From positions 1-64,000 of IMG/VR virus record IMGVR_UViG_3300013120_000738: 64,000 nucleotides of DNA. One strand, 5' to 3'. The translations under genes and the position numbers were made by a program. The notes beneath the pieces were generated by a model. That model saw only the letters and a list, made by a program, of their open reading frames with translations. It was not told where the DNA came from and did not search any database. Shown one piece after another: positions 6,206 to 11,524 of the stretch (the stretch's first letter is position 1; each line of letters begins with the position of its first letter).

Positions 6206-6829
6206 TTACAGACTGATCTTCAGCTCATCACCAGGCTGACGTCTGTAAACTACCTCAAGAGCGGCCTTGATATGGGCACGATTAGTACCATCGAAATAGA
6301 GTGCTCTAGGATGCTCAAAATATACATTAAATTCATTCTGAGGTAATATAGCTAGGCCTCGTGGCCTACGTCCCAACCAAGCCTCAACATATGGCGGATG
6401 ATCATCTATAAGGACTTTCCCATAATCTAGACTTTTGGCGACTACATCATCAGTACCAGTAACTACTCTGATTCCTATATCACCGGTCAAGGTTTCAGGA
6501 ATCCTTCTATGGCACCACTGAACTTTCTCTTGCCATGCTAAAGGACACCAAGACGGTCCTTTGGTAAGAATATGAATACTAAATCCTATTTCCTTAAGCA
6601 TTTCCAGCACCATAAATCCAAGATGGAGTGTCTCCAATTCCTCCCACCATCCTGGTGTATTAACAATAGCCTTCCGACGCGCTTCAAGATGTCGTGGTAG
6701 ACTATGAAGATCAGAATGCCGAAGAGTTTCACCAGGACCTGACATAGCCATAAGATCCCGATATAAGGCCTTTTCATAGTCAGCTAAAGTGCCGTCCATA
6801 TCAACTAGTGCTATCTGATTACCGTCCAT
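6206..6829 (-). CDS. 5'(3')-deoxyribonucleotidase (HAD, NT5C-like)
   Basis: DMDGTLADY HAD motif I, WWEEL, ILTK, K...W and LIDD motifs. Confidence 0.85.
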   Translation of the reverse strand: MDGNQIALVDMDGTLADYEKALYRDLMAMSGPGETLRHSDLHSLPRHLEARRKAIVNTPGWWEELETLHLGFMVLEMLKEIGFSIHILTKGPSWCPLAWQEKVQWCHRRIPETLTGDIGIRVVTGTDDVVAKSLDYGKVLIDDHPPYVEAWLGRRPRGLAILPQNEFNVYFEHPRALYFDGTNRAHIKAALEVVYRRQPGDELKISL

Positions 6830-7940
6830 CTCTCTTTTTGGCCTCTTGAACTTCTGATCGGAATCGAACTAAATCATCAACAGTTAGCTTCTTCAACTGT
6901 CTATCGTATAACCGTCTAACCTCGGACAGCGTTAATTTCAATTCAGTAATACATTCGTTCCAGTCCTTTATTACCATGTTCTTCCCGTCCTTCTTATATG
7001 GTATAGAAGGAGGAAGACTAAACCATATTGGAAACCTGAGATTGCGTAGTAATAATTGATTCTCAATAATACTCTTTTTACCAGCTATATCATTATCGGG
7101 CGAGAGTATTATTCTCTCCTTAGGACCTAATAATTTAATCTTTTTGACCTGATTAGGACTTAGTGATGCACCTCCTGAAGCCAGTACTTGCTCTCCCAAT
7201 GTGTTCTGATCAAATATCGATTCGGTAATAATAACATATCTAGCAGGTTCAATATCATCAAAACCATATAAATAATCTGCTCTGCCACCCTCCATCTTCC
7301 CAGTAATATTATCTTCATTATCATATTCATATAAATCCGGGAATTCAAATCTCTTATTAATCCTCGATCGGCTTTGCCAATATACTAAGTCATCGAATTC
7401 ATAGTATGGCCAATAAACATCCATCCCTAAGTAGTATAATTCGTGAGTCTCTATCCCCTCGTCAGTATAACCTCTAGACCGCAACCAACCCTTCAGAATA
7501 TTAGCTTGAGGATCTTCCGCCGACCAAAGTAGCCTCGTGCCCCCAGGAAGGCTTACGGAAACGGTTTTCTTGGCCTCTGAGGCACCGGGCCGGTTTTCGG
7601 GCCTCATGTAAAGAGAAACGCTCCCCGTGTCTCCGAGAACCTCGGAGAGGGCATCCTTCATAGAGCATTTCCGATAGACCCGGACGAATCTGATAAATGA
7701 GCAATTACGCTTACCAGTCCTAGGATTTATTGGACCGGCCCATTCATCCCCATGCCAAGAGTGGCAGACACCTTTATCAGGATTTATTTGGAAGCGGAAT
7801 CTTGTATCGCCGTCGAATGGGTCGCATATTTGATATTCCGCACCACCTTTGCGTACTTTATACTCGAAGTTTCGCTCTACCCAAGCGATAATTCTATTCG
7901 GTGGTATTTTCTTGTAGGCATGGTCAGGCATACATTTCAA
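6819..7940 (-). CDS. DNA primase (TOPRIM, T4 gp61/DnaG-like)
   Basis: N-terminal zinc-binding-like region, LRSRG, YWQSR, TOPRIM ITESIFD and PDND.AG. Confidence 0.85.
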   Translation of the reverse strand: MKCMPDHAYKKIPPNRIIAWVERNFEYKVRKGGAEYQICDPFDGDTRFRFQINPDKGVCHSWHGDEWAGPINPRTGKRNCSFIRFVRVYRKCSMKDALSEVLGDTGSVSLYMRPENRPGASEAKKTVSVSLPGGTRLLWSAEDPQANILKGWLRSRGYTDEGIETHELYYLGMDVYWPYYEFDDLVYWQSRSRINKRFEFPDLYEYDNEDNITGKMEGGRADYLYGFDDIEPARYVIITESIFDQNTLGEQVLASGGASLSPNQVKKIKLLGPKERIILSPDNDIAGKKSIIENQLLLRNLRFPIWFSLPPSIPYKKDGKNMVIKDWNECITELKLTLSEVRRLYDRQLKKLTVDDLVRFRSEVQEAKKRDGR

Positions 7941-7969: not shown

Positions 7970-9730
7970 CTAACGATCAGGAATAGTTCGAACATCTTTA
8001 GTATCTCCATTAGGATCTACAGCAGTTGGTAGGATTTCTACCTCTTCATCTAGTACCACTTGTGCGACATATAAGTTTCTACCATTAATCACTGACATCA
8101 CTCGAATGTTGATGTCAATTTCTTCACCATCCTTGGTGACCATTTTGCCAGAAACTTGTATGATGCCGCCTTTATTTAATTTTTCCAGAAGATCCGGATA
8201 CGTCATTCCTATTTGGTGTCTCTCGAATCTTCCTGGGGGGATTATTAGGTCAAGCTTTCTACCTATAGCTTCACCTTCTGTCCACCCAAGTAATTTTTGA
8301 GCACCATCATTCCACATAGCAATCGTACCATTCTTAGCATCACAAATAATATATGCTGTATCACTCATTTCAATTATTCTACGCCACTGATCTGCTCTCT
8401 TATTAGCCCTGTATATTGTTATGACTTGCCATAGGTCTTCCATCAAGAAAGTAACTTGCAAGACGTCATCTTGCGTATACGGTTTCTTCTTATTCCCAAG
8501 TCCTATAATTAGTCTACATTTCCCTTCAGTAAAAACTGGTACAGACATATATCGGCTCAATACTACTTTATGCTCTGCAGGGTGCTCTGCATTTTCATCC
8601 ATAGGCTTGCCACCAAAGTCATTGTTAACGTATGCCTTTTGTGTTCGAAATGGAATAGCCCATTGTGCTTCCCTTGCGATACCTTCTGCAATATCAAATT
8701 CAGCACGATCATTATGTATCTTATAATCCAACTGCATATTTTCAGACCAAACAGCTACTGTCACCGTATTTTCATCATTTTCATGAACATAGCCTATATA
8801 ACCATACCTACTACCAGTCAAGCGAATACATTCTTCTAGACAAAAATCCTTCAAACTCGCCTCAGTATGTGTACCAACATGGCTGTATAATTTAAGAGAA
8901 GCTTCTAATCTCTCTTGCGTTATACTAATCCTAACATCATTCACTTGTGCCACATGTAAACTATATCCAAGAAATGAAACCAAAAAAGCAATGATAAGAA
9001 TGATTATAGCAGATGATACTTTGCGTAATGTGTTTTCAGGCTTCCGCTTACGCGATTCATGTCTATCGTGGAGCCGCTTAAAAATCGGAGTAAGAGCACG
9101 AATGAACACAACAGAACCAACAAGTATGACCAAAACAGCAAAACTTGAAGCAATAACACCAGCCCTAATAAAAGGACTTCTGATTTCAGCAATATCCATT
9201 TTCGCCACTAATCCAAGATCGCAACAAATCATATCAACGGGTTCATATGCTGCAAGGACATATACACCTCTATAATCGCGACCTACCATGGAACCAGAGT
9301 GACCATTTAGAACCATTTGCATAGGCTCAGCATAATTAGATTTTAAAGCTATGATCTTACGATCTTCTACACCTGTATGGCGATGACTAAGTAGAAATAC
9401 TATATCACTACCTTCTCGTTCTGCTAATGTAAATTCTCCAGTTTTGCCAAAACCATTATATCTCCGATGTGCTTCAGTAATTTGAGTCAATGCTGCTTCA
9501 GATGCTTCATCTTGATCTTCAATTTGACTATGAGAGAATTTAGCTATTGACTCCATTAATCTGGCCTGGCTACGAGAAGTCTCAACTAATCTACGCTCAA
9601 CTTCATGTACTGCAGCATTATACGACAACACTATCGAGACAATACCAATAATCAATGACACACAAGTCATAACTATTAGTAAAAAATAAAATCTTTTACG
9701 ATCATCACGTATCATCGTTTGGCTCATCAT
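7970..9730 (-). CDS. Membrane sensor-like protein (TM-Cache-TM-TM-GAF-PAS) with no kinase or output domain
   Basis: Cache signature GRDYRGVYVLAAYEP...LGLVAKMD; GAF RYMSVPVF...GLGNKKKPY...DDV; PAS WNDGAQKLLGWTEGEAIG; the protein ends right after the PAS domain. Confidence 0.8.
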   Translation of the reverse strand: MMSQTMIRDDRKRFYFLLIVMTCVSLIIGIVSIVLSYNAAVHEVERRLVETSRSQARLMESIAKFSHSQIEDQDEASEAALTQITEAHRRYNGFGKTGEFTLAEREGSDIVFLLSHRHTGVEDRKIIALKSNYAEPMQMVLNGHSGSMVGRDYRGVYVLAAYEPVDMICCDLGLVAKMDIAEIRSPFIRAGVIASSFAVLVILVGSVVFIRALTPIFKRLHDRHESRKRKPENTLRKVSSAIIILIIAFLVSFLGYSLHVAQVNDVRISITQERLEASLKLYSHVGTHTEASLKDFCLEECIRLTGSRYGYIGYVHENDENTVTVAVWSENMQLDYKIHNDRAEFDIAEGIAREAQWAIPFRTQKAYVNNDFGGKPMDENAEHPAEHKVVLSRYMSVPVFTEGKCRLIIGLGNKKKPYTQDDVLQVTFLMEDLWQVITIYRANKRADQWRRIIEMSDTAYIICDAKNGTIAMWNDGAQKLLGWTEGEAIGRKLDLIIPPGRFERHQIGMTYPDLLEKLNKGGIIQVSGKMVTKDGEEIDINIRVMSVINGRNLYVAQVVLDEEVEILPTAVDPNGDTKDVRTIPDR

Positions 9731-10055
9731 CCTCCTCCGACTCATCAGGAACCGGTTCAATATGGAGATTTATCTTCCCCTGAAAGAAAATCTTCATTAA
9801 ATCAAGTGCCGTTGCCCCACCTATTCCAGCTAGCCCACTCACGGCTAACAAAAATGGTATATTTCCTTTGCCTTCAAAGTAATTATACCACATTAAAGCA
9901 ACAATTAATCCAATGATTCCACTATATAAGATAGACGATAAGACGGATCTGAGATTCAGATCTTCTTTACCTCTCAGTAAAGCTGCTAGTCCTCCAAGAG
10001 CTGCGACGCCGAAGGCCGACATGAAGACTAGTATATGAGTAAGAGTCCACACCAT
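9705..10055 (-). CDS. Putative holin (LydA-like, 3 TM)
   Basis: Small protein with three hydrophobic segments, GGLAA and GLAGIGGATALD patterns, and an acidic C-tail. Confidence 0.65.
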   Translation of the reverse strand: MVWTLTHILVFMSAFGVAALGGLAALLRGKEDLNLRSVLSSILYSGIIGLIVALMWYNYFEGKGNIPFLLAVSGLAGIGGATALDLMKIFFQGKINLHIEPVPDESEEDDEPNDDT

Positions 10056-10089
10056 AAGTTAACCCAGTCATAAGTTAACCCAGTCATAA
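10053..10089. repeat. Perfect 16-bp tandem duplication at the holin translation start
   Basis: cataagttaacccagt x2 plus cataa. Confidence 0.9.
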
Positions 10090-10090
10090 A

Positions 10091-10582
10091 TTATCCTACA
10101 CAAGCATGAAGGCACAAACCATACACGAAAAGCCCAAACAAACTAAGTATGATACACCAAAAGAACACACACCTCCAAAACCTAATTTTCCTCTCCTTCA
10201 GCAACAGATAAGCTTGAACAATAAGGGCATTTCCTATAAATTGCATATTCCCTTGACCCTTCCATAGGTATGTCAATGCTCCTGCATTATTAGCTTCCAG
10301 AATTAACTCAAGCTCTTCACTACCTGAAAAGACGACAACAGGGGGACTTTTATGTCGTCTATATCTAATATATTCAATAGTTTGTTTAGGTGTTGAATCT
10401 GGCAGATTCAGATCTAACAAAATCAAATCTGCATGTCTTTCACGTCCATGTGCATCATGTAGAGTACTAACAACCTCCAATGATATCAACTTATTCTTAT
10501 CATTGTGTTCTAATACTCGCTGCATTAGAGCGATATCGACTTGTAAGTCCTCGACCCACAATATCTTCATCGATTTCATCAT
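10091..10582 (-). CDS. Response-regulator receiver domain with C-terminal TM helix
   Basis: KILWVED, LILLDLNLPD (phospho-Asp), VVFSG, YLWK; C-terminal hydrophobic FFWCIILSLFGLFVYGLC. Confidence 0.85.
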   Translation of the reverse strand: MMKSMKILWVEDLQVDIALMQRVLEHNDKNKLISLEVVSTLHDAHGRERHADLILLDLNLPDSTPKQTIEYIRYRRHKSPPVVVFSGSEELELILEANNAGALTYLWKGQGNMQFIGNALIVQAYLLLKERKIRFWRCVFFWCIILSLFGLFVYGLCLHACVG

Positions 10583-10607: not shown

Positions 10608-11474
10608 TCATGATATCGTAAGAACAAATTTCCTGCTCACCCTAGTCGAACCATTCGGCAGCGTCAAAGTGATGTAATACCTATATGTCCCCTTTAAAAA
10701 ACGAGACGTGTTGAGATCATACTGGACTACCCACGGATTTGACCTATACGATCCTTGTCTGATACCAATCCTACATGCCTCAGCATCGGCAAGCAATTCA
10801 TTGTGCTGAGTTTCTATCGTGATAGTCGGCTGCAAAAATGGAATGATAGGATTAACAAGATTGAAATTATAATCATACAAAGGCAAAGGCATAAGCCCAA
10901 CCTCAAGAGGCCTCGCCTCAGGTGTATGAAATTTCTGATCTAGTGGTTCAAAACCAAACCGAATAGTCTGTAACCGATCGTCGCAAAACCATTCTTCTGG
11001 ATAAACCCAAAACCGATGACAACACCTTAATAACAATGGGTCATAGGTGTCCTCATCCATATCACAATCTGTAGCATCCGTACCTAACGCTCCACAAGGA
11101 TTATCGGCGAAATAGTACCAAACATCAAAATAGACATCAGGTACTTCAAAGTCCTCTGAAATAGCATAGGGAAGGTGATATCTGCCAGCTACCGGTGTAT
11201 CATCCTCTGATGGCTCTGTGCAGCAGTCGCCAGCTTCAGAAGCTATCTCATGGCGACAAATTGGAGATGGGTATAGAGGATCATCGAGATCAACAACAGG
11301 CACAGTAGCCACCAAATTATGTGGAACCACCGATGACTTATAGATCTCAATTTGCCTGATAGCGTATGGATCAGTTAATACCCCATTCTTTCGGAAATCC
11401 ACGTTTAGATCAACCACACTGCCTCTTCTGGCAGAGATTCGTGGATACGCACCAGTAAGCTGTGCACATGTCAT
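10608..11474 (-). CDS. Putative virion structural protein
   Basis: Beta-rich acidic ORF in the tail operon; SD GGGAG before ATG 11474. Confidence 0.55.
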   Translation of the reverse strand: MTCAQLTGAYPRISARRGSVVDLNVDFRKNGVLTDPYAIRQIEIYKSSVVPHNLVATVPVVDLDDPLYPSPICRHEIASEAGDCCTEPSEDDTPVAGRYHLPYAISEDFEVPDVYFDVWYYFADNPCGALGTDATDCDMDEDTYDPLLLRCCHRFWVYPEEWFCDDRLQTIRFGFEPLDQKFHTPEARPLEVGLMPLPLYDYNFNLVNPIIPFLQPTITIETQHNELLADAEACRIGIRQGSYRSNPWVVQYDLNTSRFLKGTYRYYITLTLPNGSTRVSRKFVLTIS

Positions 11475-11524
11475 ACCACACACTCCCTAAAAGCTATAAT
11501 ATCTTTGATGTGTGGTGATGCAGA

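What the first reader, a model, noticed from the sequence alone, without database searches (positions are those of the whole stretch)
7970..10582. Kinase-less sensor and membrane-anchored receiver flanking the holin: a possible lysis-timing signalling module
Seen: three consecutive co-oriented genes encode a receiver domain (intact Asp, Ser/Thr and Lys positions) ending in a TM helix, a 3-TM holin, and a TM-Cache-TM-TM-GAF-PAS protein with no kinase, cyclase or other output. The third TM would place GAF-PAS on the opposite face from host sensors. Established: the T4 holin T has a periplasmic GAF-fold domain bound by antiholin RI in lysis inhibition. Inference: host signalling domains were stripped of outputs and membrane-tethered to couple holin triggering to host phosphorelay status or external ligands.
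Basis: partly seen in the sequence, partly recalled or inferred. Interest (0 to 1): 0.72.

Follow-up and report, generated by a model that had tools for sequence, protein, structure and literature searches.

The report
Phage holin-like protein with sensor partners
A marine giant phage carries an accessory three-gene membrane cassette built around a small holin-like protein and a membrane-anchored PAS sensor that nearly always travel together in uncultured phages, which suggests, without proving it, sensor-controlled timing of membrane permeabilisation or lysis.

Summary
Three tightly packed minus-strand genes encode three proteins. The first is a receiver domain with all phospho-site residues and a C-terminal membrane helix. 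The second is a 116-aa three-helix membrane protein. The third is a 581-aa protein ordered TM, Cache-like domain, TM, TM, GAF, PAS, with no kinase or other output.

New here: the triplet occurs only in this phage species. It sits in a hypervariable slot between two genes that are syntenic in 55 related giant-phage contigs.

Its core is conserved elsewhere. In 21 of 22 assessable loci from other uncultured phages, a homolog of the 3-TM protein is followed at once by a ~200-aa TM-anchored PAS protein, often with overlapping stop and start.

The window's sensor is a chimera. The "third TM" and the PAS come from that phage partner family. The Cache-like N-terminus (45-50% identity) and the GAF resemble those of bacterial histidine kinases.

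The PAS is closest to the haem oxygen sensors FixL and DosP, with the proximal His conserved.

The holin call is plausible but sub-threshold, and no endolysin lies nearby. The receiver is a one-off addition.

The lysis-timing idea is therefore partly supported: sensor-holin coupling is strong, while the lysis role and the receiver's role are inferred.

The parts
10091..10582 (-). Membrane-anchored single-domain response regulator (163 aa). Receiver domain at 10253-10564, phospho-acceptor D57 codon at 10412-10414, C-terminal TM (residues 138-156) at 10115-10171.
   Evidence: Pfam PF00072 at 42.9 bits, over the cut-off. E11/D12, D57, S86 and K108 align to LuxO and KdpE. Hydropathy. It is the only receiver in the 227-kb record. 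It is absent from the other holin-like loci and from related giant phages.
9705..10055 (-). 3-TM holin-like protein (116 aa). Helices at 7-28, 35-60 and 66-91. Predicted topology is N-out, C-in, with an acidic C-terminal tail.
   Evidence: PF16083 (LydA holin) 23.7 bits, below the 28.4 cut-off. phrog_6384 and phrog_785 'holin' at E~1e-6. The family has 279 cluster representatives. Members hit only holin families. AF2 model. The named viral fold matches among the top 50 are almost all holins, but weak. hhalign against the P1 LydA clade is negative.
7970..9715 (-). Kinase-less chimeric membrane sensor (581 aa from M16; the ORF is open from TTG at 9760).
9101..9682 (-). Histidine-kinase-derived module. 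TM1 at 9626-9682, Cache-like extracytoplasmic domain at 9158-9625, TM2 at 9101-9157.
   Evidence: 45-50% identity to the N-terminal sensor domain of many bacterial HKs. AF2 pLDDT is about 90. Atlas Cache look-alikes.
8963..9100 (-). K/R-rich cytoplasmic loop (9020-9100) followed by the 'third TM' (8963-9019). This TM is the ancestral signal-anchor of the phage TM-PAS family.
   Evidence: The TM-PAS family HMM aligns to sensor residues 224-268. The loop holds 10 K/R in 27 residues. Bacterial homologs have a coiled-coil linker here instead.
8420..8869 (-). GAF domain, lying between the TM-PAS anchor and the PAS domain.
   Evidence: PF13185 at 46.8 bits. 25-29% identity to the GAF domains of HKs P0047, P0002, P0003, P0004 and P0036. 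AF2 is confident, and the best fold matches are GAF-containing proteins (phosphodiesterase GAF regions, phytochrome sensory modules).
8075..8389 (-). FixL/DosP-like PAS domain. The candidate proximal His (H500 in 581-aa numbering) has its codon at 8216-8218.
   Evidence: PF00989 at 37.1 bits. The TM-PAS HMM aligns to residues 437-563 at E 8e-31. Nine of the 11 PDB hits are haem-PAS FixL or DosP, with the His aligned to the FixL haem ligand. The His is present in 16 of 17 family sequences.
10608..11483 (-). Conserved upstream flank: a 291-aa protein of unknown function, one border of the hypervariable slot.
   Evidence: Found in 55 related IMG/VR contigs at 49-81% identity, always after the baseplate-hub and 70-aa genes.
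6819..7940 (-). Conserved downstream flank: DNA primase, the other border of the slot.
   Evidence: phrog_47 at E 2e-26. Syntenic in the related contigs. The gap between the flanks ranges from about 22 bp to 5.8 kb.

Best explanation
The cassette is an accessory, horizontally assembled membrane module. Its core is a two-gene unit that is widespread in uncultured phages: a small 3-TM holin-type protein, and a partner anchored by one N-terminal TM helix that displays a FixL/DosP-like PAS domain on the outer face of the cytoplasmic membrane.

Shown:
- The pair is conserved and often translationally coupled.
- The window's sensor contains that partner, namely its anchor (the 'third TM') and its PAS.
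- A bacterial histidine-kinase N-terminus (TM, Cache-like domain, TM) is fused in front. A GAF lies between anchor and PAS.
- The sensor has no enzymatic output.
- The receiver has an intact phospho-site and a tail-anchor.

Inferred:
- With no catalytic output, the sensor acts by protein-protein contact in the membrane on the 3-TM protein. It would work like an antiholin, or a co-activator, whose grip depends on what its extracytoplasmic domains bind: an unknown Cache ligand, an unknown GAF ligand, and possibly haem-bound O2 or redox state.
- This would set when the 3-TM protein oligomerises and permeabilises the membrane.
- The tail-anchored receiver adds a cytoplasmic input at the same membrane site, through phosphorylation by a host kinase or by acetyl phosphate.

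The closest analogies are T4 RI acting on holin T, and P1 LydB acting on LydA.
For: Pair conservation:
- 17 of 18 assessable loci with close homologs of the 3-TM protein (44-61% identity) carry a TM-PAS gene directly downstream.
- All 4 distant loci (31-36% identity) do so too.
- Upstream neighbours vary between loci.

Chimera:
- The family HMM hits the sensor in two pieces, 224-268 and 437-563.
- The HK-like N-terminus is 45-50% identical to bacterial kinases.

No output and no kinase:
- The sensor carries no output domain.
- No kinase was found in the 227-kb record.

Topology:
- N-in, Cache out, a loop with 10 K/R in, GAF-PAS out.
- The stand-alone TM-PAS proteins have K/R-rich N-termini (RKRLSW-type) before the TM, consistent with the same orientation.

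Holin character of the 3-TM family:
- Only holin families are matched: phrog_6384 by 70 of 100 members, phrog_785 by 27, phrog_175 by 13, PF16083 by 7 and PF04550 by 3.
- Most top-50 viral fold matches, and nearly all the named ones, are holins.

PAS and receiver:
- The PAS is nearest to haem-PAS FixL and DosP, with the proximal His conserved.
- The receiver residues are intact.

Precedent:
- P1 encodes holin LydA and its antagonist LydB as overlapping genes. They sit in the late dar operon, unlinked to the endolysin (PMC9025707).
- T4 RI is a membrane-tethered periplasmic antiholin (PMC11413866).
Against: - The holin assignment is sub-threshold in Pfam (23.7 against 28.4 bits).
- hhalign against the P1 LydA clade gives probability 0.6%.
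- Fold matches are weak, the best at E 1.5e-3.
- The C-terminal tail is acidic, not basic as in typical holins.
- No endolysin or spanin lies near the cassette. None of four endolysin families was found in the record, which is 63% complete.
- Near-complete relatives lack the 3-TM family, so it is not needed for lysis in this clade.
- In 11 other loci the pair is followed by a 2H-SAK or InPase 'polyvalent'-type protein, not by lysis genes.
- A non-covalent haem PAS and a GAF outside the cytoplasm would be unusual.
- The receiver association is unique to this phage.
- No direct evidence of binding exists.
Confidence: 0.4

Rival explanations
1. Interference with host signalling. The kinase-less sensor, through its HK-derived Cache-like domain and TM helices, forms dead heterodimers with the related host histidine kinase, or titrates its ligand. 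The membrane-tethered receiver drains or reads phosphoryl groups from host kinases. The 3-TM protein is only a scaffold or a passenger.
For: The N-terminal module is 45-50% identical to that of many bacterial kinases and keeps their TM1-sensor-TM2 layout. The kinase part is missing. The receiver keeps every residue needed for phosphotransfer, and the record encodes no kinase. Phage proteins that perturb two-component systems are known, for example PIT4 (title and abstract of PMC10714779).
Against: This does not explain the near-universal pairing of the PAS part with the 3-TM protein in phages that have neither the HK module nor a receiver. The third TM puts GAF-PAS on the opposite face from a kinase's cytoplasmic domains. 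Identity to any known HK is only about 50%, so no specific host target is identifiable.
Confidence: 0.2
2. The 3-TM/TM-PAS pair is a membrane module unrelated to lysis timing. It might be superinfection exclusion or envelope sensing. Or it might serve the virion-borne counter-defence or RNA-repair 'polyvalent' proteins that follow it in other phages. The holin resemblance would then reflect only a shared small helical-bundle architecture.
For: In 11 loci the pair is followed by a 2H-SAK protein, often fused to InPase or LigD_N. The InPase part hits PHROGs named DarB-like antirestriction, minor head protein and virion structural protein. No endolysin lies beside any pair examined. Holin homology is sub-threshold or negative in two tests.
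Against: The window's copy of the pair moved without any 2H-SAK gene, and none is in the record. The only families the 3-TM proteins match, by sequence and by fold, are holins. In P1 a proven holin/antiholin pair also sits in front of antirestriction genes, so that context does not argue against a holin.
Confidence: 0.2
3. The adjacency of the receiver is incidental. It is an independent moron dropped into a recombination hot spot and has no functional tie to the other two genes.
For: The slot between the 291-aa gene and the primase holds unrelated cargo in different relatives: nothing, a PAS plus tail-anchored pair, HNH-like or zinc-ribbon genes, giant proteins. No other holin-like locus has a receiver. 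The receiver has no detectable close relative.
Against: It is membrane-anchored like its two neighbours, lies 35 bp upstream of the 3-TM gene on the same strand, and carries no output domain of its own. All metagenomic copies keep the three genes identical and intact.
Confidence: 0.15

Closest known systems
Phage P1 LydA (holin) / LydB (antiholin) in the late dar operon
   Same: A small multi-TM holin gene is followed, with overlapping stop and start, by a gene for its antagonist. The pair is unlinked to the endolysin and sits upstream of virion-borne antirestriction genes (PMC9025707). The 3-TM family's only Pfam hits are LydA-type holin families.
   Different: Homology to the P1 LydA clade is not demonstrable (hhalign probability 0.6%). 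The paper describes LydA with two TM helices and LydB with no predicted TM and no known domain. Here the partner is a TM-anchored PAS protein, extended by Cache-like and GAF domains.
Phage T4 holin T / antiholin RI (lysis inhibition)
   Same: A membrane-tethered protein with an extracytoplasmic globular domain binds the holin and delays lysis in response to an external cue (PMC11413866). The predicted topology of the TM-PAS partner is the same kind.
   Different: There is no sequence relation. T has a large periplasmic domain, whereas this 3-TM protein exposes only short loops. rI and t are not adjacent.
Haem-PAS oxygen sensors FixL and DosP (EcDOS)
   Same: They make up nearly all PDB sequence hits for the PAS of the partner family and of the window's sensor, with the proximal haem-ligand His aligned. 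The NCBIfam FixL model also gives a partial hit.
   Different: FixL and DosP PAS domains are cytoplasmic and drive a kinase or phosphodiesterase. Here the domain is predicted to lie outside the cytoplasm and has no enzymatic output. The distal Arg of FixL is not evident in the window's sequence by inspection. Haem binding is untested.
Bacterial sensor histidine kinases with TM, Cache-like domain, TM, linker, GAF, PAS, HisKA, HATPase (e.g. P0047, P0036)
   Same: Same N-terminal sensor module at 45-50% identity, and a GAF of the same type.
   Different: The phage protein lacks the DHp and catalytic domains. In place of the coiled-coil linker it has a K/R-rich loop plus a third TM.
LytSR two-component control of the holin-like CidAB/LrgAB proteins in staphylococci (own knowledge, not tested here)
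   Same: Two-component signalling is coupled to holin/antiholin-like membrane proteins.
   Different: There the control is transcriptional and uses a complete kinase plus a DNA-binding regulator. Here there is no kinase and no DNA-binding domain, and all three proteins are membrane-anchored.

Membership tests
Response regulator receiver (PF00072) | Profile match over the curated cut-off | tested here: met
   42.9 bits against 30.2; 43.4 bits in the genome scan.
Response regulator receiver (PF00072) | Acidic pair, phospho-acceptor Asp, Ser/Thr and Lys at canonical positions | tested here: met
   E11/D12, D57, S86 and K108 align to LuxO and KdpE.
Response regulator receiver (PF00072) | Cognate histidine kinase encoded by the same genome | tested here: inconclusive
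   No HATPase_c over the cut-off in the 227-kb record. The one weak hit lies in a 547-aa ORF at 186 kb. The record is only 63% complete.
Holin, superfamily III / LydA family (PF16083) | Profile match over Pfam's gathering score | tested here: not met
   23.7 bits against 28.4. Only 7 of 100 family members reach E<=1e-3.
Holin, superfamily III / LydA family (PF16083) | Profile-profile homology to the experimentally studied P1 LydA/LydC clade | tested here: not met
   hhalign probability 0.6%, E 0.097, against a shallow alignment of 7 sequences.
Holin (functional class) | Small protein with one or more TM helices and a charged C-terminal tail | tested here: met
   116 aa with three helices. The tail is charged, but acidic rather than basic.
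Holin (functional class) | Similarity to families annotated as holins | tested here: met
   phrog_6384 at 2.5e-6 and phrog_785 at 7.7e-6. 70, 27 and 13 of 100 members hit the three holin PHROGs and nothing else. The named viral fold matches among the top 50 are almost all holins, but weak.
Holin (functional class) | Genomic linkage to an endolysin or spanin | tested here: not met
   None lies in the cassette or its flanks. PF00959, PF01464, PF01510 and PF00182 are absent from the record. P1 shows that linkage is not obligatory.
Holin (functional class) | Forms lethal membrane lesions that release endolysin | not testable with these tools
   Needs expression assays.
Antiholin (functional class, as P1 LydB or T4 RI) | Encoded beside, or overlapping, the holin gene | tested here: met
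   The window's genes overlap by 11 nt. The same order holds in 21 of 22 assessable loci, with overlapping stop and start in the three nearest homolog loci.
Antiholin (functional class, as P1 LydB or T4 RI) | Physically binds the holin | tested here: inconclusive
   The complex prediction returned no verdict.
Sensor histidine kinase | HisKA/DHp and HATPase_c catalytic domains | tested here: not met
   No such Pfam hit in the 596-aa ORF. The primase gene starts 29 bp after its stop.
Haem-binding PAS (FixL/DosP type) | Closest solved relatives are haem-PAS, and the proximal His is conserved | tested here: met
   Nine of the 11 PDB hits for the window's PAS, and 13 of 14 for L068, are FixL or DosP. 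The His aligns with the haem ligand. The His is present in 16 of 17 family sequences.
Haem-binding PAS (FixL/DosP type) | Binds haem and responds to O2, CO, NO or redox state | not testable with these tools
   Needs spectroscopy of the purified domain. The distal Arg is not evident by inspection.
Cache / PDC extracytoplasmic sensor domain | Match to a Pfam Cache model | tested here: not met
   No Cache family hit at E<=0.1. Atlas look-alikes carry the name Cache, with dCache or sCache in related clusters, which is a lead only.

The most novel reading that the evidence does not exclude
Uncultured phages carry a previously undescribed class of lysis (or membrane-permeabilisation) regulators. In it, a FixL/DosP-like, possibly haem-binding PAS sensor is anchored on the outer face of the membrane and gates a holin-type partner. 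This marine giant phage has upgraded that two-gene unit into a kinase-less, multi-input device. The inputs are a Cache ligand, a GAF ligand, the PAS, and a membrane-tethered phospho-receiver reading the host's phosphorelay. Together they would decide when the cell is opened.
Probability: 0.25. Interest if true: 0.85.

Novelty: new variant of a known kind. Interest (0 to 1): 0.68.

Why it matters
Apart from T4-type lysis inhibition, few ways are known by which phages adjust lysis timing to outside conditions. Here a holin-type protein is paired again and again with a sensor domain related to oxygen sensors. That gives a concrete, testable candidate for environmental control of lysis in uncultured phages.

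The window's version also shows how a phage can build a signalling device without any kinase. It fuses a bacterial sensor module onto its own membrane partner and adds a tethered receiver.

If the 3-TM protein turns out not to be a holin, the conserved pair still defines a new phage membrane-sensing module of unknown role.

Tried and rejected
- GenBank phages: megablast of the region, and tblastn of the sensor, the 3-TM protein and a TM-PAS partner, all found nothing. The tail sheath finds only distant cultured relatives.
- Word-based homolog search with the receiver found only itself.
- Complex prediction of sensor residues 216-581 with the 3-TM protein returned no verdict. This counts neither for nor against binding.
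- hhalign of the 3-TM family against P1 LydA, alone and as a 7-sequence alignment, was negative.
- Endolysin families PF00959, PF01464, PF01510 and PF00182 were not found in the record. The PF00182 control rang nowhere, so that search is uninformative.
- The sigma-70 promoter and terminator scan, and the T4 late-promoter motif TATAAATA, were not enriched, so they say nothing about timing.
- The Foldseek search with the whole sensor model was dominated by the GAF domain, so it did not classify the N-terminal domain.
- A mixed MAFFT alignment of full-length kinases and TM-PAS proteins (A5) misaligned the anchor and was discarded. GAF fragments also misaligned.
- dN/dS across metagenomic copies was impossible because all copies are 100% identical.
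- PADLOC found no defence-system family for any of the three proteins or the partners.
- The alignment-based scan of IMG/VR for the 3-TM family found only one further locus, L071. That locus is the single assessable one without a recognisable PAS partner.
- The library search linking PAS domains to holins or antiholins returned one irrelevant paper.
Full report
**What the window is.** The window is the first 64 kb of a 227,725-bp IMG/VR virus record. CheckV estimates it at 63% complete. Around the finding lie genes for a tail sheath, a T4-type baseplate hub, a DNA primase and an NT5C nucleotidase. No cultured phage is close. The sheath reaches only about 41% identity over a third of its length, and the region has no nucleotide or protein match in GenBank phages. 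Identical copies of the cassette occur in several marine metagenomes, on contigs up to 340 kb.

**Checking the observation: gene layout.** Three minus-strand ORFs lie 25-35 bp apart, and the second and third overlap by 11 nt.

**Checking the observation: the receiver.** The 163-aa product of the first gene matches the receiver domain over Pfam's cut-off. Aligned to LuxO and KdpE, it has E11/D12, D57, S86 and K108 in place. It ends in a strongly hydrophobic helix followed by only seven residues, so it is a tail-anchor.

**Checking the observation: the 3-TM protein.** The 116-aa product of the second gene has three hydrophobic spans. A confident AlphaFold2 model shows three helices.

**Checking the observation: the sensor.** The third ORF is open from a TTG at 9760. 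Homologs align only from residue 17, and public gene calls start at M16, giving 581 aa. It has GAF_2 and PAS domains and no kinase, cyclase or other output. The primase gene follows 29 bp after its stop. There are three hydrophobic spans. The 27-residue loop between the second and third holds 10 Lys/Arg. The positive-inside rule therefore places the N-terminal domain and the GAF-PAS part outside the cytoplasm. The N-terminal domain is not recognised by Pfam Cache models. It folds confidently as an alpha/beta sensor domain, and its Atlas look-alikes are labelled Cache.

**Where the cassette sits.** The gene order baseplate hub, 70-aa gene, 291-aa gene, gap, primase is kept in 55 related IMG/VR contigs. 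The gap between the 291-aa gene and the primase is hypervariable:
- 22-100 bp in many contigs;
- about 0.9-1 kb in many others;
- up to 5.8 kb in a few.

The common 0.9-1 kb filling is a stand-alone PAS protein plus a coiled-coil protein with a C-terminal TM helix. The receiver, 3-TM and sensor triplet is found only in this phage species. Five related records, two of them 98-100% complete, contain no homolog of the 3-TM family and no receiver domain. The cassette is therefore accessory cargo in a recombination hot spot, not a core function of the clade.

**The conserved core.** An exhaustive HMMER search with the 3-TM protein found 279 cluster representatives. The three nearest, at 53-61% identity, are each followed by a 197-203-aa protein with one N-terminal TM helix and a PAS domain, with overlapping stop and start.

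A metagenome scan added 17 loci from other phages. I built an HMM from these partner proteins. It finds a partner directly downstream in 17 of 18 assessable close loci, at E 1e-47 to 1e-77. The exception is L071. Three further loci end too soon to judge.

Four loci with distant homologs (31-36% identity) also have a TM-anchored downstream gene that matches the HMM, at E 1e-6 to 1e-15. Upstream neighbours differ between loci. So the pair, not the wider neighbourhood, is what is kept.

**The sensor is a chimera.** The partner HMM aligns to the window's sensor in two separate pieces. Residues 224-268 cover the K/R motif and the 'third TM'. Residues 437-563 cover the PAS, at E 8e-31.
- Residues 1 to about 220 are 45-50% identical to the N-terminal sensor module of many bacterial histidine kinases.
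- Kinases such as P0047 and P0036 continue the alignment into the GAF at 25-29% identity. Where the phage protein has the charged loop and third TM, they have a coiled-coil linker.
- The 'third TM' is therefore the original signal-anchor of the phage partner. The HK-type N-terminus was fused in front of it, and a GAF resembling HK GAFs lies between the anchor and the PAS.
- The stand-alone partners have K/R-rich N-termini and acidic or neutral stretches after the TM. They are predicted N-in with the PAS outside.
- The fusion after the kinase's TM2, which ends in the cytoplasm, preserves that orientation.

**What kind of PAS.** Sequence searches of the PDB were run with a stand-alone partner and with the window's PAS. 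They return almost only the haem-binding oxygen sensors DosP and FixL. The His that ligates haem aligns to H500 of the sensor in 581-aa numbering. That His is present in 16 of 17 family sequences. NCBIfam's FixL model gives a partial hit as well. Haem binding is an inference. The distal Arg of FixL is not evident by inspection, and a non-covalent haem domain outside the cytoplasm would be unusual.

**Is the middle protein a holin?**

For:
- The only Pfam and PHROG families that the window's protein and 100 relatives match are holin families.
- Most of the 50 best structural matches among viral proteins, and nearly all the named ones, are holins or LydA-type holins.
- The size, three helices and predicted N-out, C-in topology fit class I holins.

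Against:
- The Pfam score is below the gathering threshold.
- A profile-profile comparison with the P1 LydA/LydC clade is negative.
- The fold matches are weak.
- The tail is acidic.
- No endolysin lies near any copy examined, and four endolysin families are absent from the incomplete record.

I rate a holin-type function at roughly two in three.

**A telling parallel.** In phage P1 the holin gene lydA is followed, with a 4-bp overlap, by lydB, which encodes its antagonist. The pair heads the late dar operon of antirestriction and head proteins, far from the endolysin (PMC9025707). In 11 of the loci found here the 3-TM/TM-PAS pair is likewise followed by a 2H-SAK protein, often fused to InPase or LigD_N. 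The InPase part matches PHROGs named DarB-like antirestriction, minor head protein and virion structural protein. The window's copy lacks such a gene. Homology with P1 is not shown. The layout does show that a holin/antiholin pair need not sit beside an endolysin.

**The receiver.** It is the only receiver in the record. No kinase was found, though completeness is limited. None of the other loci or related phages has a receiver, and it has no close relatives. Its link to the pair rests on adjacency, shared strand, shared membrane location and lack of any output domain. That makes it the weakest part of the model.

**Most likely mechanism.**

Shown:
- a conserved, coupled pair;
- a chimeric, output-less sensor with extracytoplasmic domains;
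- an intact tail-anchored receiver.

Inferred:
- the sensor acts on the 3-TM protein by contact in the membrane, as RI does on T in T4 (PMC11413866) and as LydB does on LydA in P1;
- this makes oligomerisation of the 3-TM protein depend on ligands or redox state sensed outside the cytoplasm;
- the receiver adds a cytoplasmic phosphorylation input.

Confidence is about 0.4. Three rivals remain open:
- interference with host two-component signalling;
- a non-lysis membrane function tied to counter-defence or superinfection;
- an unrelated receiver.

A complex prediction gave no verdict and counts neither way.

**Novelty.** No paper in the searchable library links PAS domains with holins or antiholins in phages. 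No cultured phage carries either protein. The kind, a holin with an adjacent regulator, is known. The PAS-sensor partner, its apparent relation to oxygen sensors, and the kinase-less three-protein elaboration are new variants.

Noticed in passing
L009, L012-L017, L021, L024-L027, L030, L031, L036, L037, L044 (slot between the 291-aa gene and the primase; e.g. L013:8871-9425 and L013:9388-9801): Many relatives of this giant phage fill the same slot with a different pair. One gene encodes a soluble PAS_3-type protein of 135-189 aa. The other encodes a 112-145-aa coiled-coil protein with a conserved N-terminal W.EY(K/R)RLVL.ELERL motif and a C-terminal TM helix. The second protein gives weak hits to phrog_1193 'hemolysin' (E 1e-3) and NCBIfam SLATT_4 (22.8 bits, below the cut-off). 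So 'PAS plus small membrane protein' recurs at this locus in a non-homologous form.
   Followed up: partly
L073, L074, L075, L076, L077, L080, L083, L086, L088, L091, L093 (e.g. L074:5877-7403, L086:2035-5637): In other phages the 3-TM/TM-PAS pair is followed by a 2H-SAK phosphoesterase protein of 146-1200 aa, often fused to InPase, LigD_N and ligase-OB domains. This is a 'polyvalent', RNA-repair or Dar-like type of protein. Whether this third gene works with the pair is unknown.
   Followed up: partly
L044:9570-13391: One relative carries three tandem paralogous genes (468, 367 and 361 aa, with near-identical N-termini) in the hypervariable slot. The first has a DUF982 hit.
   Followed up: no
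L057:7021-12754: Another relative fills the slot with two very large ORFs (925 and 984 aa), one of them with dockerin-like wording in its N-terminus. Function unknown.
   Followed up: no
G000:C1:186026-186187 (outside the window): The only HATPase_c-like signal in the record is a weak sub-threshold hit (19.9 bits) inside a 547-aa ORF. It may be a GHKL ATPase, such as a topoisomerase subunit, rather than a histidine kinase.
   Followed up: no
window 10091-10582: ESM-Atlas feature look-alikes of the receiver are clusters of 162-168-aa 'response regulator' proteins, mostly from Bacteroidota and of the same length (score 0.97). This hints at a bacterial family of similarly sized, perhaps also tail-anchored, receivers, and at a possible host phylum. 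That phylum differs from the Deltaproteobacteria-type best hits of the sensor's N-terminus.
   Followed up: no
L069:2626-3069: Two genes downstream of one 3-TM/TM-PAS pair lies a 147-aa protein with a sub-threshold Peptidase_C92 (permuted papain-like amidase) hit (24.4 bits against 27). It is the only candidate cell-wall hydrolase seen near any pair.
   Followed up: no
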